Source of the DNA: Haliotis cracherodii
Taxonomy: Eukaryota
Direction: 5' to 3'
Length of the DNA stretch: 64,000 bases
Assembly (NCBI RefSeq): GCF_022045235.1
Contig: NW_027266341.1
Span: forward strand, 57,288,001 to 57,352,000
Shown: positions 3,634 through 51,800 of the stretch, piece by piece
Layout of the letters: every line of letters begins with the position of its first letter
How positions within the stretch are numbered: the stretch's first letter is position 1
The notes under the pieces: model-generated
Told to the model about the DNA's origin: nothing
Database searches by the model: none
What the model saw: only the letters and a program-made list of their open reading frames with translations
Position numbers and translations under genes: made by a program

Positions 3634-6600
3634 ATGACGAAGGTGGGTTTCTTTGTGGCAGAATATGAACTCCAAAGTATTTGTTTATTTGTTAATTTGT
3701 ATGGACATAGATACTGCACGAATATATAGATAATTCTGTCCCAAGATTTTGTTTGTTTGTTTTTTGTTTAACGTCGCATTCAGCAATATTCCAGCTATAT
3801 GACGGCGGTCGGTAAATAATCGGGACAGGACCAGACACTCCAGTCATGTGGGATACGATGACATGCATCAATCACGTCAGCGAGCCTGACCACCCGGTCC
3901 CGTTAGTTGCCTTTTAAGGCAAGCATGGGTTGCTGAAGACGGATCTCCACGGGTCCTGTCCAGAGGTACATCTATCCAGATCGCATTCTTCTGCATCTTC
4001 TTCTTCTTCTTCTTCTTCCATAGTAGATAAGTGAGTTTATAAATCTATACCAGGTAAATACGTGGATAGTTGTCTCCCTTTGCGTTACTGCGGTTACCCT
4101 TACCGCAGCCCTAGACAACGGCTTGGCCTTGACGCCTCCTATGGGCTGGTTGGCATGGACACGGTTCCGATGTAATATAGACTGTGACAATGATCCAGAC
4201 AATTGTATAAGGTAAGAAATATAAGTAAAATAATAAACATTGTCGATAGGGATTTTGTATGGAGACTAGATATATTTTCAGCCTCGTTTGCAAAACCAGA
4301 TATTTCTTTTAAAAAACCAACCCTTGCAACAATGTAATTTTTTATGGCAGACAATTTCTTTTTTTTCAACAGTCTGAAGGATAATTTTTTCAAGCATTTT
4401 CTGGGACAATATATATTTTTTCGATAAATCCCTGGCCCCATTAAGTTTCTAAGAAAAGGACCCGTGACGATCCGGGTTAGAACTGATCTTTAGCAACCCA
4501 TGCTTGTCGTAAGAGGCGACTTACGGGATCGGGTGGTCAGACTCATTGACTTGTTTGATGCATGTCATCGTTTCCCGATTGCGTGGACCACATTGCATAA
4601 CGGCCGTATGTATTGACGGGTTTGTGTAAGTAAAGTAGTAAAGTCGTAAAGTATTGACGATGCATACCCTGGTCAAGAGCATGTTCTGTGATCCATCTTA
4701 AAGAACAATATCTTCTTTGATGAACAGTGTATTCTATAGCTAGATCAACGGTGTATTATGTAATGCATTCCTTGATGAACAGTATACTCTGTAATACATA
4801 CCTTGATGAACAGCATATTCTGTAATGTATACATTGATGAACAGTATATTCTGTTATAAATACCTTGATGAACAGTATATTCTGTTATGCATACCTTGAT
4901 GGACACTATATATTCTATAATGCATACCTTGATAACTAGTATGTTCTGTGATCTGTCTTGATGAACAGTATATTCTTTGATTCACCTAAAGCTGGATGAA
5001 CAGCATATTCTTGATTTACCTTGATGAATAGTGTGTTCTGAGAGTGAAACGTGTCTCAATAAACAATGTATTCTGTGTTGGCCACAGCGAGAGACTGTTC
5101 CGGACGATGACGGACCTGCTTGTGTCCGGGGGCTACAAAGACGCCGGGTATGAGTACCTGTGTGTTGATGACTGCTGGCTGGCTGAGGAGAGAACGGCGG
5201 ATGGATCTCTCCAAGGAGACCCCAAACGGTTCCCAAGTGGAATGAAAGCTCTTGGAGATTACGTTAGTATATCATTATATTCCTAATGGTAATCCAGGAT
5301 AAGTCAAACCAACTCACAAAAAGCGTATTTGGTTTGTTACAGGTGGAGAGGGTGTACGCATGTTATGCACGTGCAGGTCATGACTACATTCCCGTGGACA
5401 CATAGGTTTCTCATAAGACTATTAAGTGGTCGATACCACCGTTACTTAATTTCTAACAGTATTAATTAAGGAATATGTCATTGAGTCAAATATCACTCCG
5501 ATAATGTCTAAACCTTCGCAATCATTTGATGAATTATAAGACACTATTCATTATTGCTCTCTGGGGTAAAATAAGTATTCCATTTTTACAGTAAATGAAT
5601 TCCCTTCATTGAGACGATACTCCTCTTTTTAGTATGCAAATTTAAATTTTCTGTCATCGTTTTCACAGTCATCGGGTAGCTCACATCAGTGCGTACTATT
5701 ATGTGCTATTGAACTCGCCTCTAGAACTCGCTGTCGAGACAGGACACGCACCTATCCATCGCAATACTTGTCGCGGACCACCCGCTACCCCTTTCTTCAC
5801 AATGGTACGCGCCAGTGGGCGGACCTCATACATAGTCATAATTGGAAAATTTGTGCAAAAGACAACAATTGGTCGGCTCCTCCATTCGTAGACAAAGTGG
5901 CCAAAAGAACATTCTGTCTTCAATAAAAGTTCCTTGTAATATTCAGTACAACAACGTAAAGTGCTTTCTCTGATAGTGTAATGTGTGAATATTTATATTT
6001 GGGCTTTTATGTCTATCGAAAGAGATACAGTAACACATTGCCAGTCATCCTGATCAGATGAGCATGGAACTACCGTACAGTTAATGCACTGCATATGTCT
6101 CTTGTAATATCTATAGTGCCGGAACATCAGATGAGCAAATGTGTGGACGGGCTCCATTTGGGTTCATTCTAAGGAATTGAAACATATTCAAATATTTCGT
6201 ATTATGCCCAAATGTAATACATTGCTGACTGCCTCCGAGGTCTAGTGGTAGAGCGTCCGCCCGGAGAGCGGAAGGCAGGGGGATCGATCCCCGGCCGCGT
6301 CATACCAAAAGACGTTAAAAGATGGTACTTGTTGTTACCCTGTCTGGCGCTCGGCATTAAGGGGCTAAAACAAGGGTTGGTCGGCTCGGAGTCAGTATAC
6401 TGTGTCTGAGTGGGGTATTCATGTCAAACCTCGGCATGGTATTTTCAGTGAGATAGCACTATAAATCGGCATCAGTCCGGTCTAGTACAAGCAGCCACAC
6501 ACACACACGCGCATGCATGCACGTCGCTATATAAGTGCAATAATCTTGGACGCGACGTTAAACCCCATTTCACCTCACCTCACCGTAATACATTGCTAAT

Positions 6601-6656
6601 CATCTTGATTAGACCATCTTCATCGGATTAACAGGGAACAGTCAAACCTGTACACC

Positions 6657-6692
<36 letters not shown>

Positions 6693-9600
6693 CTGCTTGT
6701 ACTAGTCCTGACTGATGCCGATTTATAGTGCAAGCCCACTGAGATACCATGCCGCAGTTTAACAGGAACACACCACTCAGACACAGTGACTCCGAGCCGA
6801 CCAGTCCTTGTTTTAGCCCCTAATGCCGTGCGCCAGTGCCATCTTTATACGTCTTTTGGTATGACGCTCCTGGGGATAGAACCCCGGACCTTCCGCTCTA
6901 GAACTAGTTTGTTTGTTTGTTGTATAACGCCGCACTCAGCAATATTCCAGGTATATGACGTAGGTCTGTAAATAATCGAGTCTGGACTAGAAATTCCAGT
7001 GATTGACATCATGAGCATCGGTCCACGAAATTGGGATACGATGACATGAATCTACCATGGGTTGCGGAAGACCTATTCTACCCCGGATCTTCACGGGTCT
7101 CTCTACCACTAGACCACGGAGGCGGTCCCCTCGTGCAACGTACGACACAACGCAAAACGCTTTCTCAGATGTGTACCTTTTCTATATGGGTTTTAGGTTC
7201 ATTCTAAGGGATTGAAGTTCGGCATATACGCAGACTTTGGGAAAACCACGTGTGAAAAATATCCAGGGAGTGAGTTCTACTTGAAGCAGGATGCCCAGAC
7301 ATTTGCTGACTGGGGAGTTGACCTCCTCAAATTGGATGGTTGTTATGGCGACGTCCGGGACTACGACTATGGTAAAGTTGTATTGTAACTAGTTGAGCAC
7401 TGGGCGTTAACCCATGGATCACTCTCCTACCCAAGTTCCATTGGGTCAACCTAGTACCTCTGCCATGAATCTGATGTGGCGATTCGTCACAACTTACTCA
7501 ATCCTTTCAACAAATTACATATTGGTTTCATCTATTTCATGTGTTTTTTTACTTGTACCATATGTTCCCATGTTTTTAGGTGAACAATTGACTTGCCTTT
7601 GCATGTGTTTGTGATGCCACCGGTGGGGCAGGATACGCTCCCCTTTTCACCTGGTATCCGTACTATTTGATAGTGATTCATAAACACCTGCTCATGATAT
7701 AGTCCGAATTGTACAATCGACTCTGCTTTATGCAAAGATTTCTATTGGATATGGAAAGGGTTTTGTCGCTTTATTGAAAAGTCTACACATTTAGATAAAC
7801 ATGCCTCGTATAAAAGGTTTACTGTCATTGAGATAATATTTGAGTATTTATATTTTGACATTACAATGATTGTACCCTTCCACAACCAGTTTTAAGGAGG
7901 ACGTCAAGACCAAACTGGCCGTGGCGAAGTAGCGATGCGTTTTGTGCGCCTGAACTTCTAATTATATACTCGAGGAAAAAAGTAACTGTACTTCATATAA
8001 AGTTCAATAAAATACATTTCTTCTGAATGTAAATAAGGCATCTTTAAACAGGAATTCATGAACATATCTGGTCGACAAATATGGTCGTGATTCTCAGTTT
8101 GCACATGCATGTTCAGGCACGGCGGACAATTTGGATGTTTGAGTGTTTGTTGGAAGCATGATTCTCTTACACGTGTCTTTTCAATGTGAACAGCTATAGT
8201 TAGCAGGTGCTCAATAAAACACTTTTGTTTGACCGTAAATAACGCTTACGCATTGCCACGGCTTGGTGAAAATCAACGTCCATGCGCCGGTGGTATGCAG
8301 AAAACAGGAATGGCGCAAAACAAAGACATTTTAATGTTCATGGAAACACAATATCATCTCTTTGGAGACGTTATCTGCTGCAGGACAACGCTCATGTTGT
8401 TTAACGCCGCACTCAGCAATATTCCAGCGGTCTGTAAATATTCGAGTCGGGACCAGGCAATCCAGTGATTGACATCATGAGCAAACCTTTAATGAATCCT
8501 CTTGCTCTTGTTGTCATGTTGCAGGCTATCCAGCCATGACCAAGTTCCTCAACGAAACAGGACGACCCATCATGTTTCACTGTGACTGGCCCAAGTATCA
8601 AATACTAGCAGGCATTAAGGTAAAAATTATAAAATTTACATTTTACAATTAAGTGAGTGAGTATGGTTTCACGCCGCTTTTATTAATATTACAGCAACAT
8701 CATGGCGGGGAACGCCAGAAATGGGCTTCACACATTGTACCCATGAGGGGAAACGAACCCGGGTCTTCGGCGTGACGAGCGAACGCTTTAACCACTAGGC
8801 TACCCCATCGCCACTATAAATCTTCTTATAAGCATAAACTTAACAGGAATGCTGATATAATTTCGAATTCTTCAGAACAGTGATGATACAATATAACAAT
8901 GATGAAAGTTTTTCGGGTAGGTACCCAAGGGTGACAGATTCTTGGACTTCTATCTGACAGTGTATCACTGTATTTGCAGCCTAACTACACCGCAATCCAA
9001 CAATCGTGTAACCTGTGGCGTAACTATGATGATATTTGGGACAATTGGGATGGTCTGAGCGACATCATCAACTACTACGTCAAGGACGACGACGCCTTTA
9101 TGTCTTACTCGGGGCCGGGGAGCTGGGTAGACCCAGATGAGGTATGCTTTACATTTGTTTGGGTGTTGTCTTTCTCCGCGCTCTGCCTTATGTCGGCGCT
9201 TATCTCTGGTCGGCACAGGGCCATGCACGAATCACCACGTGTCACACTTATGTTTAACCGTTAGCAACAATACATTCATTCATTCACTGAATAGGTTGAA
9301 TACATGGTTCCAATTTCCTGCTATTTCTGATTTTCGCCTCAGCAAAACTATTGATATCAAGTTACATATTGTGTGAGTGAGTGAGTGAGTGAGTGAGTGA
9401 GTGAGTGAGTGCCACAGTCAGCTTTATTCCAACTATATCACGACGGCTTATAAATAACTGTGTCTGAATCAGACACAAAAATAGTTGATATTATAAATAA
9501 AGGCTGAAAAGTGTCATTATACTGAAAGTAGTTCCGGTATTAAGGTTGATTTAACTTGATTGACATCATTCGTAACCAACTCGTGTTATTCCGGGACAAG

Positions 9601-37400: not shown

Positions 37401-40400
37401 ATATAATAAATAAGATGTTCCACGTGTCTCCTGAAACACCATGTTTCTCTCATCTCCTTTTCCCCGTCACTCGATGAGAGAAACATGATATTTCACGAGA
37501 CACATGAAATATCCTCTATATATTTCACTATGCTTTGCGTGGAACTATCCTGTACTGCAAAAGCGAACATAGCTTATCCTCCACATACCAGTAGTCCTTT
37601 GGTGAAGTCCTGGGTGGAGATGGTGTGGCTGTTGTCGGTGTCGTATCGCTTGAACAGGTCGATGACACGATAACCCCGCTCGTTCATGAAGTCGAACATC
37701 GCCTGCATGGGGTTGTTGGTGAGAAAAGTCCCAGCGTCCTGAGTTAGAATTCCCTCCCCTTTGTTGATAATTGGCCCCGTCCTAGCCCGGAGGACACGCT
37801 TTTGTTGCATCGTCTTCAGCGACGTCACAAACTCCTCGTCTACCACAACGTCCTGGAACACGGACCACGGAGAATAATATTGCCAGATGTCACAGCTATA
37901 TGAAGGCGGTCTGTCAATAATCGAGTCAGTACTAGGTCTGACAATCCAGTGATTGTCATCGGTCAACACATGATCACGAACATCCATCAAAGCAATTGGT
38001 ATAGGAAAATATGCTTTAATTAAGTGTTCTGGAAACTCGACCATAAGTAATAAGTTTGGACTACCAAAAAGCACAGACATCGGTGACATTTTCTGTGAAC
38101 GCGGACTTCGTAAAATAGTTTTAGAGGCTTAGTCTCAGGTTTTGGTTTAACATGATGTTCCTTGTTTGTTTGTTGTTTAACGCCACACTCAGCAATGTTC
38201 CAGGTCTATGACGGCGGGCTGTAAAAATGAAGCCTATTCCAACCCGGATTTTCACGGTGTGCTTACATGATGTAATTTGAATTGCTTTTTCTCTGGTTGA
38301 AAGATGAACACAAGCTCCAGACTCACCGTCAGGTCGAGCTCCCTCAGGACGCTGTTAGGAGCTTTCTCTACTGTCTTCAGGATGAGTAGAGCTACATCTG
38401 GGGTGATGGGGTTTTGACCCAGCTGAAGAATGTAACATTGAATCAGGATCTCCATCACTACACTCATACAGAAATGTAAAGACACCTTGTGGTCCCGCTT
38501 GTCTAATGAGCCCTTTAATGCTACTACATAAATAAATATACACACGCCATTTGCACGTACGCTCGTACGCACAAATTGTATGGTTATAGGGTGAATGACA
38601 CGATGGCTTCTAGAGATACTCTAACAAAACATGTTGAATGACTAAAACAGATCAGGTCAACTTCTTAACGAACCTATGCCCGAAATAAAAGGTAATGGTT
38701 AATGGTCAAAGGACGTGATAATTCTGACAGTTGTTCCACCAACCAACATTTGATCCTGACTCGGTGACATGCATCTACAGACCTACGGAAGCCGTGTCCG
38801 TTTCTGATAACAAACGTGTCCTCTCGTTTCTCCAAGTGTGTGTGTGACTCTTTGTCCATGACCTCTTCCTAGCGCTGTATCGGTGTATCGGATCGTCAAG
38901 TCAAATATTGATACAAAATGATACCTACATTGTAAACCTATGAGGACATTTATACCTGACTCACATTAACTCACTATTGTTTGGTTTGGTATCATGACAT
39001 CCCTTTAAGGATGGACTAGGCTACGGCTCCTAAGGTGCTGAGATGCCATCACGATCCAACGCTTACATCGTTACAGCCTAAGCTCTCCATTACTCTGTCT
39101 ACGATAACAACAAAAAACAATCCAAACCAAGGGCGGATCCAGCAATTATAAAAGGGAGGGTCCAAAATATCAAACCCCACTCTCAGTGAATGTTACCGCC
39201 TCCAATATACTACATTCAGTTTTCAAAAGGGGTAGGGGTCAGGCCCTCCGCCTACCAAATGCAAACATATACAATCAAGTCTCGTTAATCCGACACTCGT
39301 TCATCCGACAATCGGCTTTATTCGACACTATTGATGGGAACCGATTAAATGAAAGCCTAGACGGGTTTTGGCTTCGGTCGTATAGGTAAAGTTGAAGATC
39401 ACCACCTCCGCATAATGGACTAGCCGTCCAGGCCAAAGACAAACCAGATGGGCAACGGTTACTCTGACTGAATCTCAGCATCTTGTTACCCTGAGTGTGA
39501 TGAGGGATTCGTTCCATCTGAGTCCCTCCAGCAGGCTGCCCACAGCTATGGCGTCCACCCGGTTGCACGTGATGTCCAGGTGCTCGAGGGTGTAGTTCTC
39601 CGCCAGGGAGAGGCCGAGCGTGCGACACCCAGCCCGGGACAACCCGTTCCACGACAGGTCCAACATCAGCAAGCCGCCATTATCCTAGGGGAGACAACTC
39701 TCAGCTTTATCCGTGACATCAAAAAAGTTTGTTTGTTTGTTGTTTAACGCCGCTCTGAGCAATATTGCAGCTATATGACGGCGGTCTGTAAACAGTCGAA
39801 TATGGACCAGACAGTCCAGGGATAGATATCATGAGCATCGACCCACGCGTAATTGCGTTATCAACCATGGAACATGCTTTTTCACAGCGACCTGTATTCG
39901 AGCCTGGACAAACCGATGGTCGATAGCATGAGCAACGACACACAACCAGTCACATCACATTAAATCCTTCGTATCGTCGGCTCTTGCGATATGTCTGGGG
40001 TGCCTAATTGAATTTAAAGAAAAACGTCAAACTGAGATAGTTGCCTGACCATGGCTTCGGATACATTTATTGAACAATTGTCATTTTCAACTCAGTAGGC
40101 GCTCAACTCAGTTATACAGGTACCCTACGCGTCATGTGAACCGACCAAAATGTGGATTGGATGGTTACAATGTGCCATACTGGTTGACTGTCTTCGTCCT
40201 CTGAGGACCGCAGATGACCCATGCGATTAGCCACTTGTTTCTCAGGAGAAGTTATAATACCCTGGATGTTTTTTGGTTGGTGTATGTCATTGATTTAGAG
40301 ATCGGTTAGAGTAAGTGGTACGGTTTTACGCCGCTTTTAGCAATATTCCAGCAATATCACGGCGGGGGACACCAGAAATGGGCTTCACACATTGTACCCA

Positions 40401-43400
40401 TGTCAGGAATCGAACCCGGGTCTTCGGCGTGACGAGCGAACGCTTGAACCACTAGGCTACCAACAACACAGAGATGGGTTACAGGCAATGCGTTATGACA
40501 ATTTATTACCTCTAACCCCGCAGCAACAGCTTGTGCTCCCTGTCTCCGTAGATGGTTCCAGCTGAGGTCCAGTAGCTCAAGAGTGTCATTGTTAGCTGTT
40601 GGTAGGACACTAGTATCAGTAAGACGATACAACACAGGGAAGACGAATTAACTTAAAACTCAATATACAACTTGAACTTGTACAATGTAAATGGAAACCA
40701 AGTCAATAATACACGATACCTTACACATGGGCTAATTACAGTGTGATAAGTTTGTTTGTTTAACTCAGTTGTCGCACCCAGCAATATTACACCTATATAA
40801 CGGCGGTCTGAAATAATCGAGTCTGGGCCAGACAATCCAGTGATTGATCGATCAAAGCAATTGGGAGACGATGACATGCATCAACCTAGACAGTGAGCCT
40901 GACCACCCGATCCCGTTAGTCGCCTCTTGCGACAAGCATGGGTTGCTAAGACCTATTCTACGCTGATCTTCACGGGTCGTGATAAGTACATGCATTTATG
41001 GACTAATCTACGAAAATAGTGTTGTTTGTTTCAATATGATTAGTTTGCAGATGTGAAATGTTTTATTATTGGTAGCAGGCGGCTAAAAATTAAGTATTGA
41101 CAACAAAACTTCTCCATTTTGATTGGGTTTCAAATATAAGTAATATATGTAAATTTAATTACATCCATTAAAGTAAACAATAACGAAATATCATGAGTCG
41201 GAAATGCACGCTAACACGTTTCCAGGCGTGTCCCCTAAAAATAGAAACTGTTAATTCAGAACCAGATAAGTGAACGAGTGAGTTGGGTTTTACGTAGCTT
41301 CCAGCAATATTCCAGAAATATCACGATGGGGACACAAGAAACCGTCCTGAACTCACCTATAGCGGGCCCCAGGTAGAGACCACCAACCTCTCCAAACTTG
41401 TTATGACTTGCCCGGAGTTCCCGCAGCCACACGTTATTCTGCAACACACACAAAAGTTAATGTTCTCTTTTACATGCAAACAAATCAAAGACAAAAGGGC
41501 ACAAGGAAAAAGCGGATCAAAATCCTTCCTCAAATGCATCGGTAATATTATATATAACTGGACCTCTGCCGTATAATGTTATAAGATACAGCGTCGTGTT
41601 AACACAATGCGACAAATGGGCATTCACTTGTGGTATTTGGAGTGTTAATGTCAAGCTCCTCACAGCGATAGTCCGTTCGCGGAGCTCTCTATACTATCGC
41701 GATGTTCCCGAGAGTGTAACGAAGGTGTCATGCGCTTGGAAGGAGCTTGCGTTAATGTAAACAAAGGGACACAACTCGTAGTCCAGTTGATATTACATGT
41801 GAGTTATCCCCCTTATCTATGAGCGACAAAAAATATAACAAACGTCAACACTCAATCATTTATATTTCCATAATTTGTCAATGAAAACATTCGTAGACTT
41901 AATCCCTCCCTTTGACGTTTTCTCCTGATAATAAATACAATATTTTAAATCCATATTGTCTGGCTTGTTATTTAAAGGGCAGTCATTTTGAAAATTTTAC
42001 ATTTATTAAATTTAATTATTTCTTATCATAAATGCCTAGGATGTACTGTTTATCATTCCTCATCGTCAGTACTTCACGTGATTTTATCTATTGTTTCTCA
42101 TGCATATTTGCATAACAGTAATTATTGCAAACATAGGCGCGTTGATTATCAAACCAGTGATTAAATTAAAAGTTCTTCTTTTGTTTATTTGTTCTCTTCG
42201 CTTCATCATTCAAGATCAACAATTAAGCTTGGCTCTGTCTCTTAATATCACAACAGAACTTGTGCAAGTTAGAAAAATAAGCGGGAACGAGTTCAGGGCC
42301 CACTTACACAAAGCGATCTTAGCGCTAAGATGATTGTAACTCCCATACTTTAACATAGGCTTACAATAGTCGTAGCGCTAAGATCGCTTTGTGCAAGCGG
42401 TTCCAGATTAACGATTCCGATTCACACATTACAACTGGAATTTACACGATTAAATATTGGATATTTATTGTGATCGTAATACATGCATATGTTATCAGAA
42501 CCTCAGATTTCGCCTCTTTTGATCGCCATTTGATGAACGTTTCTGGTGAGGTCATTATGGACACTGGACACTGCGGGGCCGAACAAAAAAGACTGGTTAT
42601 ATCTACATTGCGCGTACCAACCGTGGAACTAGTTACATGCCAAAAGGACTACTGTCTATGACGTCATAACGAAGATGACGTCATGATCGGTAATCTTCGT
42701 CAATATGATTCCTCTATCGTAATATTGCGGGATCAAAAAAGGTTGTTTATTTATAATCATGTTTGTTTTCTTAACATTAGTATATTGGAGCAGAAGGTAA
42801 ATTTATTTTATCATGTAGAAATAAAAGGTTACGAAACCATTACTTTTAGTTAGCTCTGTAGTATGTCGTTATGACATTGACTGCATTGTGACGTCATAGA
42901 CAATCGTCATTTCTCAGCACACGAAGTCGATCTATTGCCACGCTCTACAAAATCTCCATTTTTCTGCGTGATTGGATTGATTGAAAGAATATAGCCTACT
43001 TTATCGTTTTGGCTGACTGACTGACCAACTTTACAATGGATTCTAAAAGAAATACAGGTAAGACATAGTAAGAATCTATTTTTATGATATCATTTTGTAT
43101 AATCTCCTTTCATCTGTAAACTCGAAAAATGATGTCCTACAGTTACTTGTAGTTAGTCTAGACATACTTGTAGTTAATACAATTTGTTCAATGTTTGTTC
43201 ACATTGTATTAAAGTAGTAGACATACTAGACAATATAAGAAATATCCACGGATGGGGTACAAGCGGAATATTTTGCGACATGAGATTATTAACAGTAGTC
43301 ATCTCAATGTGTGGACAGAGCGTCACAATCATATATTAACAAGTGGATAGAGTCTTGCAGCGGCTAATGACAGATTTTTTAAATATTTGACCTCTGGCAC

Positions 43401-46400
43401 TCAAAGAGTTCTCTAAAAAAGGTGAATTCGTATTACCGATCACGGTTGTGTTGTATTTCGCCACACAAACATACGCGCTTCAATCTTAAAACATGTTTTC
43501 AATACACAATATCATAATCGCAGATTCTTTTTGTGAACAGAGTTTTCGCTATAGTCAATAATAATTGGTATTGTCAGTTCACGAATCAAAGTTAATGCTT
43601 TTCAGTAGTTTCAGTTTTAAGTGTTTTTCATATATGTTCACTAGATATGGAATTGATCTGTATGAAATAAGAATATTAATCAAGAATAAAATTGTATTCA
43701 TATTTTACTAAATCAAAAGTATCATTAGTCGCAAATGGAATATAGCTTTTGTACACTGCGGAAATAAATGCAAACCCATTCCGTGAATGAACTTTAATCA
43801 GCAAAGGCATTTTTGCTTAATTTATATTTGATGTTTCAGTTCACGATTCATTCTGATTTCTGTTTAAAAAAAATATGCTTACTGCATCTTTATAAATTAA
43901 GAATAAAGGAATTACATTGTTATGAAGAGTAATGTAAATGATTCATATCAAGTTATGAGACCAAGTTTGAGATCTGGTGATGAATTATTTATTTCCAGGA
44001 GGCAACTGTTTCCTGTACCCGGAGTCAGCCTGGCCCCGAGTATACAACATGGCCGGCACAGACATGCTCCTGTTTGCTGGAAGGATGGCATTCCGTTCAG
44101 ACCTTCAGCTCGCGTCCATTCATTCCGATCTCAGCGTTCCTGAAACCTGCGCTAGTCCCGTGGATGCCGCCATAATCTGGACGGAAAGACAGCTTGACTA
44201 TGTCCGAAACGGTACGACCTAAAACCATCAGGCCCCGCCACAATCAGATATCACTGCGAGAATTCATTACATAAATAAATAATATTGATCACTTTAACGA
44301 TAGTAACGTTTGTGAGCAAAAACAATACAAATATTCCAAAGAAACTGGTAGGACATTTCGTAACTTGAATAAACGTTTCCTTCCAGACTTGAAAACCATA
44401 AAGAAGACCAGTATGAGGTTATCCACCCGTCAGGTACCGCCCACCCTGCCTACCCGCATGAGGGGGCGTGTCGGGGTCATCGAGTACGAACTGCAGGAAG
44501 CAGAAAGACTGAGGCAGATCCGAGAGAGAAAGCAGAGACGTGAGAGAGAAGCTTTGACTCAGGAGAGAGAAGTGATGAAGGAGGAGAGAGACATGAGAAA
44601 CACTATGTCGGCTGCGGGATGCAGAAAGAGGAAACTGGAGGAAGTGACGTCATCAAACAATATGGCGGAAACAAGATCAAAGCGATCTCGGAAACCAAAC
44701 TCCAAATACGGTAGGTACTGTTTTTAGTCTTTGAGTCTTTGAGTCGTTCAAGAAAGTAGTAGGTTGATAATTAATTTTGTGAAACCGGTTCAGTAAATTA
44801 TAATCTAATTTTCGGACTTTTGTACTCTCTCTATCTCTCTCTCTCTCATACTCTCTCTCTCTCTCTCTCTCATACAAAACTCCAAAGATGAGCTATATAA
44901 TCATATTATATATGTGTGTTATGTCTTTAAGTACACTCAATGTAGTGGTCTATGGGAGATAACTCCAGACGGCTTAATGTGTTCATGTATGGTCTAGGGG
45001 AGATAACTCCGGACAGCTTATGTTATAAAATGTACTCTTCAGTTATGGAGTAAGAAAAGGGGGAGTTCCAATATGTCTGCCTGCATGTATGCCATGTGCT
45101 CTGTGTGAATTAAAACCCTTATTCTACATTTCCTGAATCCATTATACAACAATGTGTAAGGTCGTGTGTTGTTAGACACACTCGTATTGTATGCATGTTT
45201 ATTTATTCATTCAGCATTTATTATGTTAAGACACTGAGTTAAAACTAATCTCATTAAAACCAAACCAGAATCTCGTCAAACAACCATTGAATCAAATGCC
45301 GATTTACCAACTTTCAAACACCGAACAACTATTTTGTTTTAATGGACATTTCTTTCTCTTGCAGACAGTGGCACCTTCCTCGTCCACAACGGATCCGGCG
45401 ACTCCCGCGCCTCCTCCAACATCGTCAACAGATTGAGGAGGAGAACTATAAAACGCGGCCACTAGGTTAGTACAGGGACATGATATATACATACAGTAAA
45501 CTACGGTTATAACGAACACGCTTATAACGAACTGACCGATATAACGAACTTATTTTTTAGTCCCGGCCATTTGTTGTATATATGCTGTATATATGCTTAT
45601 AACGAACTACGGTTATAACGAACTAAAATTAGTGGTCCCTTTGAGTTCGTTATAACCGTAGTTTACTGTATTGTTCTAACGGACTAAACGACGAGAGTCG
45701 GTTTAAAACAGGTAATTTAATCATCTTGTTGATGCCATTGTAGCTCGTAGCGAATTAGCCATGCAAAACTAACCCTCTGGAATACAACCAATCAATTATA
45801 CAGTGTCCTGACTGACATTGCGGTACATAGGGAGGTGGCAGCCCTTCCTGTACGTTAGTTATTTTTTACTTTTGAAGTTTTGTTATTACTGCTGTTGAGA
45901 TACTTCATTTTTTATTTTCATTTATTGGATATTACTTACGAACACGCTTAAACACTATATTAAAATTAAATATTTCTTTTATTTTGTTTTCAGAATGTGG
46001 CTATAGCAGGCAGTTTTCGTGGTCATGTCTGCATGGACAGCTGGCGATATAGTACATACATACTACGTCACATTGTCATTGAACTGTAATTGTTTCGAAA
46101 CGCTTATACATATTCCTGATTTTTGTAAATAATTTGTTAAATTTATTATTTAATAACAGTTTTACAATGCAATTATATCACATTTACAATAAACTGTTGT
46201 TACATATTCATATAGTTCTGTTATAACCGTCAGCGCCCGATATAACGCACAGCTTATCTACAGTCAACGAATAAAATGGGAGTAAGAATTAATTGTGGTG
46301 GGAGGTGAAATGGAATTGAACGTCGGGTTGAATGAGTAGTACAGACAACCATATCGGTAATAGCTGCAGGGTCGCACTGGTTTTAAAGCGTTCGTTAATC

Positions 46401-48811
46401 ACGCCGAAGGCCTGGCTTCGATTGGAAACGCAATAAACAACGGAAAACAAACAACACATAACAAAAGACACATGTTCAGTACTTGCAAAAGTGTCGACAA
46501 CGTTTCACAATAAGTATTGAACACCTTATGAGACTGAACCCAACCTCTAATTCCCCACCAGTCCGACTTGCTGCCATGGAAACACATAAGTATCGACCAC
46601 CTTATGAGTAATGCTCCGGAAATGAACCCAACCTCTAATTCCACACCAGTCCGACTTGCTGCCATGGAAACATACATATTACACACCTTATGAGTAATGC
46701 TCCGGAATTTAACCCAACCTCTAATTCCACACCAGTCCGACTTGCTGCCATGGAAACATACATATTACACACCTTATGAGTAATGCTCCGGAAATGAACC
46801 CAACCTCTAATTCCACACCAGTCCGACTTGCTGCCATGGAAACATACATATTACACACCTTATGAGTAATGCTCCGGAATTTAACCCAACCTCTAATTCC
46901 ACACCAGTCCGACTTGCTGCCATGGAAACATACATATTACACACCTTATGAGTAATGCTCCGGAATTTAACCCAACCTCTAATTCCACACCAGTCCGACT
47001 TGCTGCCATGGAAATATACATATTACACACCTTATGAGTAATGCTCCGGAAATGAACCCAACCTCTAATTCCACACCAGTCCGACTTGCTGCCATGGAAA
47101 CATACATATTACACACCTTATGAGTAATGCTCCGGAATTTAACCCAACCTCTAATTCCACACCAGTCCGACTTGCTGCCATGGAAACATACATATTACAC
47201 AACTTATGAGTAATGCTCCGGAATTTAACCCAACCTCTAATTCCACACCAGTCCGACTTGCTGCCATGGAAACATACATATTACACACCTTATGAGTAAT
47301 GCTCCGGAAATGAACCCAACCTCTAATTCCACACCAGTCCGACTTGCTGCCATGGAAACATACATATTACACACCTTATGAGTAATGCTCCGGAATTTAA
47401 CCCAACCTCTAATTCCACACCAGTCCGACTTGCTGCCATGGAAACATACATATTACACACCTTATGAGTAATGCTCCGGAATTTAACCCAACCTCTAATT
47501 CCACACCAGTCCGACTTGCTGCCATGGAAATATACATATTACACACCTTATGAGTAATGCTCCGGAAATGAACCCAACCTCTAATTCCACACCAGTCCGA
47601 CTTGCTGCCATGGAAACATACATATTACACACCTTATGAGTAATGCTCCGGAAATGAACCCAACCTCTAATTCCACACCAGTCCGACTTGCTGCCATGGA
47701 AATATACATATTACACACCTTATGAGTAATGCTCCGGAATTTAACCCAACCTCTAATTCCACACCAGTCCGACTTGCTGCCATGGAAACATACATATTAC
47801 ACACCTTATGAGTAATGCTCCGGAATTTAACCCAACCTCTAATTCCACACCAGTCCGACTTGCTGCCATGGAAACATACATATTACACACCTTATGAGTA
47901 ATGCTCCGGAAATGAACCCAACCTCTAATTCCACACCAGTCCGACTTGCTGCCATGGAAACATACATATTACACACCTTATGAGTAATGCTCCGGAATTT
48001 AACCCAACCTCTAATTCCACACCAGTCCGACTTGCTGCCATGGAAACATACATATTACACACCTTATGAGTAATGCTCCGGAAATGAACCCAACCTCTAA
48101 TTCCACACCAGTCCGACTTGCTGCCATGGAAACATACATATTACACACCTTATGAGTAATTTTCCGGTACTGAACCCAACCTCTAATTCCACACTAGTCC
48201 GACTTGCTGTCATGGAAACACATAAGTATCGAACACATTATGGGTAATGCTCCGGAACTGAACCCAACCTCTAATTCCCCACCAGTCCGACTTGCTGTCA
48301 TGGAAACACATAAGTATTAAACACCTTATGACTAATGCCCCGGAACTGAACCTAACCTCAAATTCCACACCAATCCGTCTTGTTGCCATGCAAACACATA
48401 AGTCCTAATCCACACTTGTGTGTATATACAAGGTTTCACTTGATGCTCTGGAAGCGAAGCCTGTCTATTTTTTAACCTACAGTAAATCCGACCATGGAGG
48501 AGAGACATTTAAAACAATATTGGGGAAAACTAAATCTTCATACAAAACAACGCCTGCGTCGACAAAACGTCGGATCAAAGGACTTTCCGAGATAAAAACA
48601 AGGACGACGTATATTTGAGGATAGATGGCGAGTCCCGTGTGCTGACCTGCCATGCAATGAAGCATCAACACTGCGCCAGAAGGCTGTGTGTGACATCATC
48701 CCAGAATTAGGTAAGATAGAGAGAAAATCATATTTAGAAGTGTCACACATTACATGCAACAGTACATAGTATATTCACACTGTTAACAGTAGTGTCCAGG
48801 CTGCACGGTAA

Positions 48812-48848
<37 letters not shown>

Positions 48849-51800
48849 ATCTTAATGACATATCAGGATAGTTCACTTGGCCCCTTATTTCCTCAATATT
48901 CATTAAAGCATACGTACAATATCTTCAGGAATATTTTCCGAAAACGTGACCGTGGGAGACTTCGCTTCAGGCGAATTGAGTGAGTGAGTGAGTGAGTGAG
49001 TTGGGTTTAACGCCGCTTTTAACAGTATTCAAGTTATTTCATGGCGTGTCAGCTTAATGTGGGAGGAAAGCCCGAAGTGATGCAGGTCTTAGGCGTTTAT
49101 CACTTCGGTGAAACCCACGAGCACGAGCACGGTGCCGACAAACCTAGAAATATAATCGGGGTGAACCGGGATTCGAACCCACAATCATAGGTTTCTGGCG
49201 TGCCCAAAGGACGCAACTCTGCACAGCAAATCGCGGCGCCTTAGACGACTGGGCCAGCCGTGCCCCCTCAGGCGAATCAACATCACACACACGTATCATC
49301 GTTATAGAAAAACAACCGGTCGTAACAAATATAACACGGGCGAGTGCCACATTGTGGGAGGGGATAGGGATGCATTCGGGTCCTTTTGGCTTTACCCGTA
49401 AGCTACCTCGAGCACCAACGGAGCATAGATATTGCATAGTTTCACTCGAAAACGCGTACAGACTGATCCCTCTGCACATAGTTCATAAAGCACATTTATT
49501 CATGTAAGAGGGGATTCTTATTGAATAATGGGTGCAAATTAGGTGGAACTGTATCCAAACGATTATACAAATATACACAAGGTCCAAGCTGGAGCCTTTC
49601 GTGGATTCCTGATGATAAGGTTAGTGTAGGTTATACTGTACCTCAATTATTTCCGCCAAATACTTAGCATCGTGATCGTGAAGTTCACTCCCTGAAATCA
49701 AATGCAATGGAAACAATCAGCCTCGTTCAGTAATTTGTACTGGGCGAATCCCGGCGCCGTAGACGACTGGGCCACCCGCGCCCCCTGCAGCTTTGAATTC
49801 CAGTTTTAATATTCTTTGTATTATCAATGTTATATGCCTAATAGTATTTCTCTCATACAGGAAGCTGACAGTTAAAGTGTATCTGATTATTACTTAACCT
49901 TTTTTCAGCTAGTCACGATAGGCCACCGAGTAAAAAGTACTAACTGATTAGTAAAGTCTACTAACATGTTAGTGTCTGAGTGGACAGTGAAATTTACTAA
50001 GTTAGTAAACTTTACCAACTATTTTTGTCAGTGTTAATGACTTACAATATCGAGATTGTAATGTTTGTATCCATCCATTTTTCACAATGTGTACATCCGA
50101 CGTGAAGAGCGACTTTAGTACATGTCCACTGTCTCATAATTATGAAGGACTTGAATTTTGTACGTCGAGTTTGTGCTTCTAACGGCTCGACTTCAAAACA
50201 TTATCATTCACCTGGTGTTAACAAATACGCCACCTTGAAGGGTCGCTCCGGGGTGATGTTCTATACCTGTTTGTTTGTGTGTTTGTTGTTTAACGCCTCA
50301 CTCACCAATATTCCAGCTGTATTACGGCGGTCTGTAAATAATCGAGTCTGGACCAGACACTCCAGTGATTGATATCATGAGCATCGATCCACACAATTAG
50401 GATACGATGACATGCATCAACCAAGTCAGCGAGCCTGACAACCCGATCCAGTTAGTCGCCTCATGGGTTGCTGAAGACCTATTCTACCCTGAATCTTCAT
50501 GGGGCTTTTCTGTACCTGATATGTTGAGTTTCCGGACGGTCTGGTTATCTTGCATGACCTCGGCCAGTGCTCGGATCCCATCGCCTCCTATGCGGTTCTC
50601 GGATATATTCTAAAGAACAAGAACAAAAAAACAGCAATCAAATCGCTCAAGTTGCAAGGAGTTACGATGTCGTGGCTATTCGAGCGCCTACGATTTACGG
50701 ACAAGAAATATGATCCCCGTTCTGTAAAGCAACCCAACTGCTACGAGAGCCTCACAGCTACGAGAAAGATCAGGAGCTATATATTTACGACATTCGATTA
50801 GAAATGTTTGTGAAATGAGGCCCATGTCTCCTTTTAACTCTTAGTATTTTACTCTGACTTTTAGCCAGGCGAAAACGGTGTCAATAAATATTTGAAACAC
50901 CACGCTTCTTAGTAAATTTATGATCCAATTGTACGTGCTAATTCGAAAAAAGGGGTGGTGGGGTAGCCTAGTGGTTAAAGCGTTTGCTCGTCACGCCGAA
51001 GGCCCGGGTTCGTTTCCCCAAATGGGTACAATATGTGAAGACCATTTCTGGTGTCCCCCGCCGTGATATTGCTGGAATATTGCTAAATGCGGCGTAAAAC
51101 CATACTCACTCACTCATTCGAATAACATACATTGCTTGACTTACTATTTCTGTAATGAGATTATTTTGTGGAAGGAGTTCTGCGATCGCGCTGGCACCCT
51201 CCGCGCCCAGCCAGTTGTCTTCGAGGTCAAGGCCACAGATGCGTTGATTACCCTGGTGAGGAAATTCTGACTGTGAATGCACCAATAGCATCACTAATCT
51301 GACCTCGTTGCCTCTCATTTGAAAAAAATGATGTTTGTCAGAAGAAAGGATTCATTCACGAATCTGACGTCCACATGTGGTGTAGAAAACTAAACTATCT
51401 GTTTTCAGTACTTTATTTGAAAATTGTTTGATTATTATATTTTTGTTGAAATGGAATTTGAATTTGACGTGGGCAGATATATTTTACTAAATATCAGAAT
51501 TTGACAAGGCTGATAGCTATTTTAAAAACAACAACAATAGCAGAATTTGACATGGTCGGACAAGTATTTATGAATACAACAGAAGTTGACAATTTCTGGT
51601 TATTTATTAACAAACCACTATTTTAAATATAACTATTTTACTTATACAACAGAATTTGGTGTGAGCGGATAACTATTTGTTATAAAACATAATTTGGTGT
51701 GGGCGGATAACCATTTGTAATACAACAGAATTTGTTGTGGGCGAATAACTATTTGTAATACAACAGAATTTGGTGTGGGCGGATAATAATTTTACTAATA

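What the first reader, a model, noticed from the sequence alone, without database searches (positions are those of the whole stretch)
43036..46200. Hidden antisense nested gene encoding an orphan basic nuclear-type protein
Seen: four exons with canonical splice sites, all joined in phase 1, form a stop-free 219-aa ORF (MDSKRNTGGNCFLYPESAWPRVYNMAG...AAIIWTERQLDYVRNDLKTIKK...LQEAERLRQIRERKQRREREALTQEREVMKEERDMR...RKRKLEE...RSKRSRKPNSKYDSG...RLRRRTIKRGH*). The stop abuts a donor, followed by a UTR exon and AATAAA; a MITE and a (CT)n tract fall only in predicted introns. The protein has a small hydrophobic N-domain, a charged helix, NLS-like RKRK, and an R-S-x-R-x-R-x-P-x-x-Y motif reminiscent of arginine-anchor chromatin-tethering peptides of retroelements and viruses (inference). 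I recognise no family. Together with the CRE element and X-box array it may form an undescribed germline/ciliary regulatory or selfish module inside a probable ciliary/testis gene.
Basis: partly seen in the sequence, partly recalled or inferred. Interest (0 to 1): 0.85.

Follow-up and report, generated by a model that had tools for sequence, protein, structure and literature searches.

The report
Real abalone-only gene, already annotated

Summary
Plus-strand exons 43036-43057, 43999-44211, 44387-44710 and 45365-45465, plus a 3'UTR exon at 45994-~46206, give a 219-codon frame. cDNA-type contigs from four public runs show all four junctions. RefSeq already holds the same model: Haliotis rufescens LOC124139620, 219 aa, 96-97% identical.

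The window's genome has a second intact copy on contig C12. It keeps every splice site and the stop, its indels are multiples of three, and dN/dS is 0.35 (p = 1.4e-4). A decayed third copy on C34 carries stops.

A profile search of 5.8 billion proteins and an exhaustive search of 1.84 billion representatives found only four proteins in two Haliotis species. There was no Pfam, PDB, Atlas or viral relative.

The product has an acidic N-terminal part, one confident long charged helix and a very basic tail (pI about 10). Its RKRK and KRSRK..NSKYD motifs are invariant. The best guess is a nuclear protein that binds nucleic acid or chromatin, which is inferred only.

The promoter carries three full CRE palindromes in blocks perfectly kept between the paralogues. 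The exonic CRE, the satellite ("X-box array") and the LRR host gene were not duplicated with the gene, so the "module" idea fails. The bZIP-like stretch is not conserved. Interest is low.

The parts
42656..42685 (+). Promoter block with two full CRE palindromes (TGACGTCA at 42659 and 42676)
   Evidence: 30 nt identical in the C12 paralogue, against about 77% identity around it. The motif is enriched in the window: 8 found against 1.28 expected.
42885..42910 (+). Promoter block with a third CRE palindrome (42889-42896), 147 nt before the ATG
   Evidence: Identical in the paralogue.
42995..43057 (+). Exon 1: 5'UTR (reaches at least about 42995) and the first 22 coding bases from the ATG at 43036
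   Evidence: The ATG and the donor G|GTAAGA are kept in the paralogue. Contigs of X3 and X4 carry 58 letters before the joint.
43999..44211 (+). Exon 2: conserved N-terminal part (70 full codons)
   Evidence: It is 90% identical to the paralogue in DNA and protein, and 96% to P0001. The joint 44211/44387 is seen in X1, X3 and X4.
44387..44710 (+). Exon 3: basic linker, long charged helix, RKRK, and KRSRK..NSKY
   Evidence: The paralogue's indels of 3 and 6 bases keep the frame. The joint 44710/45365 is seen in X1 and X3.
44645..44652 (+). CRE palindrome inside exon 3 (codes ..VTS..)
   Evidence: It is deleted in the paralogue, so it is not a conserved element.
44825..44875 (.). (CT)n tract in intron 3
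44917..45155 (+). Dispersed repeat in intron 3, with a GT donor after 45155 that one contig joins to exon 4
   Evidence: At least 30 copies at 85-95% identity in the genome. Joint 45155/45365 with GT..AG ends in X3.
45365..45465 (+). Exon 4: basic C-terminal tail and the stop TAG at 45463-45465, which abuts the next donor
   Evidence: The stop and the donor are kept in the paralogue.
45491..45671 (.). 181-bp MITE in the 3'UTR intron
   Evidence: Perfect 27-nt inverted ends. Over 3000 candidate copies at 96-99% identity. Very high depth in all runs.
45994..46206 (+). 3'UTR exon with AATAAA at 46188-46193
   Evidence: The joint 45465/45994 with GT..AG ends is seen in all four runs, and a contig ends at 46206. 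The acceptor and AATAAA are kept in the paralogue.

Best explanation
This is a real, transcribed, spliced protein-coding gene under selection. It lies on the plus strand between minus-strand exons of an LRR/EF-hand (LRRC74-like) gene in an abalone (Haliotis) genome. It is the counterpart of RefSeq LOC124139620 of H. rufescens and belongs to a small family seen so far only in Haliotis: two intact paralogues per genome, plus decayed copies. That much is shown.

The rest is inferred. Its own compact promoter, with three conserved full cAMP-response elements, probably puts it under CREB/ATF-type control. The 219-aa product is an acidic N-terminal part, a basic linker, one long charged helix and a very basic tail. 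It probably enters the nucleus through the invariant RKRK and KRSRK clusters, which have a bipartite-NLS-like spacing of 12-15 residues. There it probably binds nucleic acid or chromatin through the invariant KRSRK-x-NSKYD-xx-TFL-x-HNG stretch, while the conserved N-terminal part recruits a partner.

My odds: real coding gene 0.95; nuclear 0.6; chromatin or nucleic-acid binder 0.35.
For: - The exons, frames and signals are read directly.
- All four joints appear in contigs of four runs. Both paralogue types are seen spliced.
- No intronless copy exists in the genome that could mimic this.
- RefSeq holds a 219-aa protein that is 96-97% identical.
- The C12 paralogue keeps the ATG, all splice sites, the stop and AATAAA. 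Its indels are 3, 6 and 3 bases. dS is 0.22, dN is 0.078 and dN/dS is 0.35 (Fisher p = 1.4e-4).
- Introns are mostly unalignable, while exons are 83-90% identical.
- The C34 copy, with the same exon layout, has stops. This shows what an unselected copy looks like.
- The four Haliotis proteins share 121 invariant columns, including RKRK and KRSRK..NSKYD..TFL.HNG.
- pI is 9.9-10.4; the tail has pI about 12 and the N-terminal part about 5.
- Helix 106-170 is the only confident part of the model.
- The CRE blocks are perfectly conserved.
Against: - There is no functional evidence at all: no family, fold, localisation or tissue information.
- The runs are only guessed to be RNA, and contigs give neither strand nor level. 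The GT..AG ends do give the strand.
- For the window's own type, only junctions 3 and 4 are seen in near-identical contigs. Junctions 1 and 2 come from paralogue-like contigs.
- dN/dS of 0.35 is only moderate constraint.
- CRE palindromes are common in many promoters and do not prove cAMP control.
- The structure model is poor (pLDDT 54).
Confidence: 0.85

Rival explanations
1. It is a spliced non-coding or antisense regulatory transcript of the LRR host gene, and its 219-codon frame is incidental.
For: It lies antisense inside the host gene. No protein family or confident fold was found.
Against: The frame, start, stop and phase are kept in an unlinked paralogue that has no such host gene. 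Indels are multiples of three, and dN/dS is 0.35 with p = 1.4e-4. H. asinina has proteins of 219-220 aa with 121 invariant columns. The decayed C34 copy shows that stops do accumulate without selection.
Confidence: 0.04
2. It is a domesticated or selfish gene of transposon, retroelement or viral origin that travels with the CRE and the satellite as a module.
For: There are several copies in the genome. A satellite lies directly downstream. The basic motif loosely recalls viral chromatin tethers, which rests on memory only. Exon 2 has weak 46% matches at four loci.
Against: Only two intact copies exist, plus one pseudogene and one fragment, and all of them have introns. The duplicated unit is 42656-46232 with no terminal repeats, and the satellite and host are not part of it. 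The four weak matches lie antisense to a LINE ORF and have E = 0.03. No relative was found in IMG/VR, and there was no transposase or RT domain.
Confidence: 0.04
3. It is a very divergent bZIP-type transcription factor: a Jun-like basic region that binds the CRE sites of its own promoter.
For: There is a weak bZIP_1 hit at residues 59-86 of exon 3 (E = 7e-4, 20 bits). JunD and c-Jun bZIP chains are among the top PDB profile matches (E = 0.28-1.7). The window's product has ..RN....A..CRKRKLE.., as in Jun (the comparison with Jun is from memory). CRE sites lie in the promoter.
Against: The score is below Pfam's cut-off of 27.6, and none of the four homologues gives the hit. The key Asn is Asp in three of the four homologues and in the paralogue, and the Cys is Trp or Ala in some. 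No leucine heptads follow RKRKLEE, where the sequence turns into a Ser/Asn-rich basic tail. The self-pairing test of 100-176 gave no answer.
Confidence: 0.05

Closest known systems
Haliotis rufescens uncharacterized protein LOC124139620 (RefSeq; P0001), its paralogue LOC124152277 (P0002), and two H. asinina proteins (P0003, P0004)
   Same: They have the same length (217-220 aa). Identity is 96-97% to P0001 over exons 2 and 3, and about 79% to the paralogue type over exon 3. The domain order and motifs are the same.
   Different: Nothing essential differs. The window's product has about seven residue differences from P0001, so the window comes from a close relative of H. rufescens or a divergent allele. 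None of these proteins has a name, a domain or a paper.
Nested intronic genes on the opposite strand of a host gene (a common arrangement in animals)
   Same: It is a small complete transcription unit with its own promoter and poly(A) signal. It lies between minus-strand LRR_6-coding ORFs at or below 41453 and at or above 51106.
   Different: No transcript shows that the host exons on both sides belong to one gene. The paralogue sits in an unrelated neighbourhood, so nesting is not a property of the family.
bZIP basic region (Pfam PF00170; Jun/AP-1)
   Same: There is a short local resemblance around CRKRKLE, preceded by a charged helix.
   Different: The match is below threshold, the signature residues are not conserved, and there is no leucine zipper.
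Arginine-anchor nucleosome binders (CENP-C motif, LANA N-terminus, shugoshin C-terminal basic motif). Recalled from memory, not tested.
   Same: There is a short invariant Arg/Lys-rich stretch followed by an aromatic residue (KRSRK-x-NSKY).
   Different: No Pfam model of these families matches at E up to 10. The spacing and the hydrophobic partner residues differ. No binding data exist.

Membership tests
Haliotis LOC124139620 / LOC124152277 family (uncharacterised) | Significant full-length sequence similarity and the same length | tested here: met
   Exon 3 gives E = 1e-53 at 97% identity, and exon 2 gives E = 4e-38 at 96%, both to the 219-aa P0001.
Haliotis LOC124139620 / LOC124152277 family (uncharacterised) | Same exon-intron layout in other copies | tested here: met
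   The C12 paralogue and the C34 pseudogene have the same exon order and phases.
bZIP transcription factors (PF00170) | Score at or above Pfam's gathering cut-off | tested here: not met
   20 bits against a cut-off of 27.6 for the window's exon 3. The four homologues give no hit.
bZIP transcription factors (PF00170) | Conserved Asn and Cys/Ser-Arg of the basic region, followed by leucine heptads | tested here: not met
   Asn is replaced by Asp in the paralogue and in three of the four homologues, and Cys is variable. No heptad leucines follow.
Transposable-element or virus-derived gene | High copy number, terminal repeats, TE or viral protein domains, or relatives in viral contigs | tested here: not met
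   There are 2 intact copies, 1 pseudogene and 1 fragment. No domains were found, and IMG/VR gave nothing.
Nucleosome acidic-patch binders (CENP-C motif, LANA-like) | Arginine anchor shown to contact the H2A-H2B acidic patch | not testable with these tools
   This is only a motif resemblance recalled from memory. No Pfam match was found.
Nested intronic gene | The whole transcription unit lies within one intron of a host gene on the other strand | tested here: inconclusive
   LRR_6 ORFs lie on the minus strand on both sides (39475-39672, 40357-40635 and 51106-51318). No transcript evidence shows that they form one gene.

The most novel reading that the evidence does not exclude
The two paralogues are a Haliotis-born pair of cAMP/CREB-induced nuclear proteins. 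On this reading, their invariant KRSRK-x-NSKYD stretch acts as an arginine anchor on the nucleosome acidic patch (like CENP-C or LANA), and the conserved acidic N-terminal part brings a partner to chromatin. That would be a lineage-restricted chromatin tether of cellular, not viral, origin.
Probability: 0.07. Interest if true: 0.5.

Novelty: already known. Interest (0 to 1): 0.2.

Why it matters
The finding shows that reading raw sequence recovered a correct four-exon gene, including a 22-base first coding exon and a stop codon that abuts a donor. It also settles that this is an annotated but unstudied abalone-restricted gene rather than a new kind of element. The family is a tidy example of a taxonomically restricted gene: two selected copies, a decayed one as an internal control, and a promoter with three perfectly kept CRE sites. 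That makes it an easy case for reporter and localisation tests in abalone. It does not open a wider question.

Tried and rejected
- **Joined product.** Exons were searched by reference, and the returned orthologue P0001 served as the full-length proxy.
- **Pfam.** Scans of the exons and of P0001-P0004 gave nothing above threshold.
- **Exhaustive search with exon 2.** The only non-Haliotis hit, P0005, is a 1309-aa bacterial repeat protein that matches through seven copies of a short blade-like repeat. I judged it chance.
- **Weak exon-2 matches.** Matches at C4, C18 and C23 (E = 0.03) lie antisense to a LINE ORF and were rejected.
- **Other sequence libraries.** ESM Atlas gave nothing, tried twice. 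The PDB profile search gave nothing significant. IMG/VR gave nothing. Papers naming the two LOC ids: none.
- **Structure.** AlphaFold on the four-sequence alignment gave pLDDT 54. No fold search was run on it because the matches would be meaningless.
- **Self-pairing of helix 100-176.** No support and no verdict. This is not evidence either way.
- **Bacterial-type promoter scan**: irrelevant for an animal gene.
The DNA of the H. rufescens and H. asinina genes, their neighbours and multi-species dN/dS could therefore not be obtained.
- **Order of duplication and speciation.** Five quartet sites and one shared insertion favour duplication before the asinina/rufescens split. However, the rufescens paralogues are the most alike pair (82%), so gene conversion or parallel duplication cannot be excluded.
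Full report
**What is in the sequence**

- An ATG at 43036 opens a 22-base coding exon that ends G|GTAAGA.
- Exon 2 is 43999-44211, exon 3 is 44387-44710 and exon 4 is 45365-45465.
- The stop TAG is followed at once by GTTAGT.
- A further exon begins at 45994, after a ..TTTTCAG acceptor, and carries AATAAA at 46188-46193.
- The in-frame pieces translate without stops. With the three split codons they make 219 residues.

Each exon was used by reference, and the returned orthologue served for full-length work.

**Is it transcribed and spliced?**

One run search gave 23 runs that hold small shares of the stretch, as expected if only exons are present. Contigs of four runs from three coded organisms were laid on 42600-46400. 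They cover the exons and skip the introns.
- 45465/45994 (GT..AG) appears in all four runs.
- 44710/45365 appears in X1 and X3.
- 44211/44387 appears in X1, X3 and X4.
- 43057/43999 appears in X3 and X4. There a few unlike letters lie at the ends, because those contigs are of the paralogue type.

X1 holds near-identical contigs (5 to 7 differences in 160-250 bases). It also holds paralogue-like contigs that carry the 9-base gap at 44643-44653, so both family members are expressed.

The runs are only guessed to be RNA. However, the genome has no intronless copy, so spliced contigs must come from RNA. The GT..AG ends fix the plus strand.

**Is it already known?**

Yes. The stop-free frame around exon 3, scored on the exon alone, finds four proteins:
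- H. rufescens LOC124139620 (219 aa, 97% identity);
- H. rufescens LOC124152277 (217 aa);
- two H. asinina proteins (220 and 219 aa).

Exon 2 finds the first of these at 96% identity. The window therefore comes from an abalone close to H. rufescens (inference), and the gene is an annotated 'uncharacterized protein', not a hidden one. No paper names either LOC id.

**Is it under selection?**

The window's genome (1.18 Gb) holds a second copy on contig C12.
- Homology runs only from 42656 to 46232, which is the promoter through the poly(A) site. Introns are largely unalignable, while exons are 83-90% identical.
- The ATG, every donor and acceptor, the stop with its abutting donor, and AATAAA are all kept. 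The indels are 3, 6 and 3 bases.
- Summed exon by exon, Nei-Gojobori counts give dS 0.22, dN 0.078 and dN/dS 0.35. Fisher p is 1.4e-4.

A third copy on C34 has the same exon order but carries stops and a frame break. A short exon-3 fragment lies near the C12 gene. These show how an unselected copy decays.

Whether the duplication precedes the asinina/rufescens split is unsettled.

**What family is it?**

None that is known.
- Pfam gives nothing above threshold.
- A profile of the four proteins finds only themselves among 5.8 billion clusters.
- An exhaustive phmmer search of 1.84 billion representatives with exon 2 finds P0001 and one bacterial repeat protein, which I judged chance.
- The ESM Atlas, a PDB profile search and IMG/VR give nothing.
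- Four weak exon-2 matches lie antisense to a LINE ORF.

The weak bZIP_1 hit and the weak Jun matches rest on ..RN....A..CRKRKLE... The Asn and Cys are not conserved and no leucine zipper follows, so it is not a bZIP.

**The protein**

Across the four homologues 121 columns are invariant. Among the conserved parts are:
- much of residues 14-73;
- PTLPT.MRG..GVIEYE;
- RKRK;
- KRSRK.NSKYD..TFL.HNG.

The N-terminal 80 residues are acidic (pI about 5). The linker and tail are very basic (pI 11-12), and the whole protein has pI 9.9-10.4.

AlphaFold with only four sequences is poor (pLDDT 54). Only a long helix at 106-170 is confident. A self-pairing test of that helix gave no verdict.

The working model is a nuclear protein that binds nucleic acid or chromatin through its basic tail, with the N-terminal part as the partner-binding end. 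This is inference from composition and conservation alone.

**Regulation and surroundings**

The promoter holds three full CRE palindromes (42659, 42676, 42889). They lie in 30- and 26-base blocks that are identical in the paralogue, against about 77% identity around them. The motif occurs 8 times in the window against 1.28 expected. The fourth nearby CRE, inside exon 3, is deleted in the paralogue.

The 86-bp satellite at 46535-48396 is not part of the duplicated unit. Nor are the LRR_6/EF-hand ORFs on the minus strand. The C12 copy lies in a different neighbourhood. The proposed gene, CRE and X-box 'module' is therefore not supported.

The MITE, the (CT)n tract and a second dispersed repeat all lie in introns. 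The second repeat offers a donor at 45155 that one contig joins to exon 4.

**Verdict**

Noticed in passing
window 42656-42685 and 42885-42910: Three full CRE palindromes (TGACGTCA) lie in promoter blocks that are 100% identical between the two paralogues, while the flanks are about 77% identical. They are the best-conserved non-coding letters of the locus.
   Followed up: partly
window 45491-45671: A very young and abundant 181-bp MITE with perfect 27-nt inverted ends. The genome holds over 3000 candidate copies at 96-99% identity. It is present at huge depth inside many unrelated transcripts of all four runs.
   Followed up: partly
window 44917-45155: A dispersed repeat of about 236 bp (at least 30 copies, 85-95% identical) in intron 3 supplies a GTAAGG donor after 45155. 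One contig (X3) joins it to exon 4, so this may be an exonised repeat or a minor isoform.
   Followed up: no
window 46535-48396: An 86-bp satellite with 21.6 copies at 95% identity begins about 330 bp after the gene's poly(A) site. It is absent from the paralogous locus.
   Followed up: partly
L015 (G000:C34:54255000-54264999), about 5070-6602: A decayed third family member with the same exon order. It has stops in the exon-3 and exon-4 homologues and a frame break in the exon-2 homologue.
   Followed up: partly
L012 (G000:C12:8686873-8689953), 1492-1578: An isolated fragment of exon 3 (residues 1-36, 69% identity, with a 7-residue gap). It lies about 3 kb from the intact C12 paralogue on the other strand.
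   Followed up: no
L016 (G000:C4:27094000-27103999), 5007-8768: An intact 1253-aa ORF of a non-LTR retrotransposon (by eye: endonuclease, reverse transcriptase and RNase H type). At least four loci gave identical scores in the exon-2 search.
   Followed up: no
G000:C12:8659000-8676000 (L017, L018): Several minus-strand ORFs near the paralogue share a repeated motif (..DIVIA..DS..T..), which suggests a cluster of related genes. They are unrelated to the window's LRR host.
   Followed up: no
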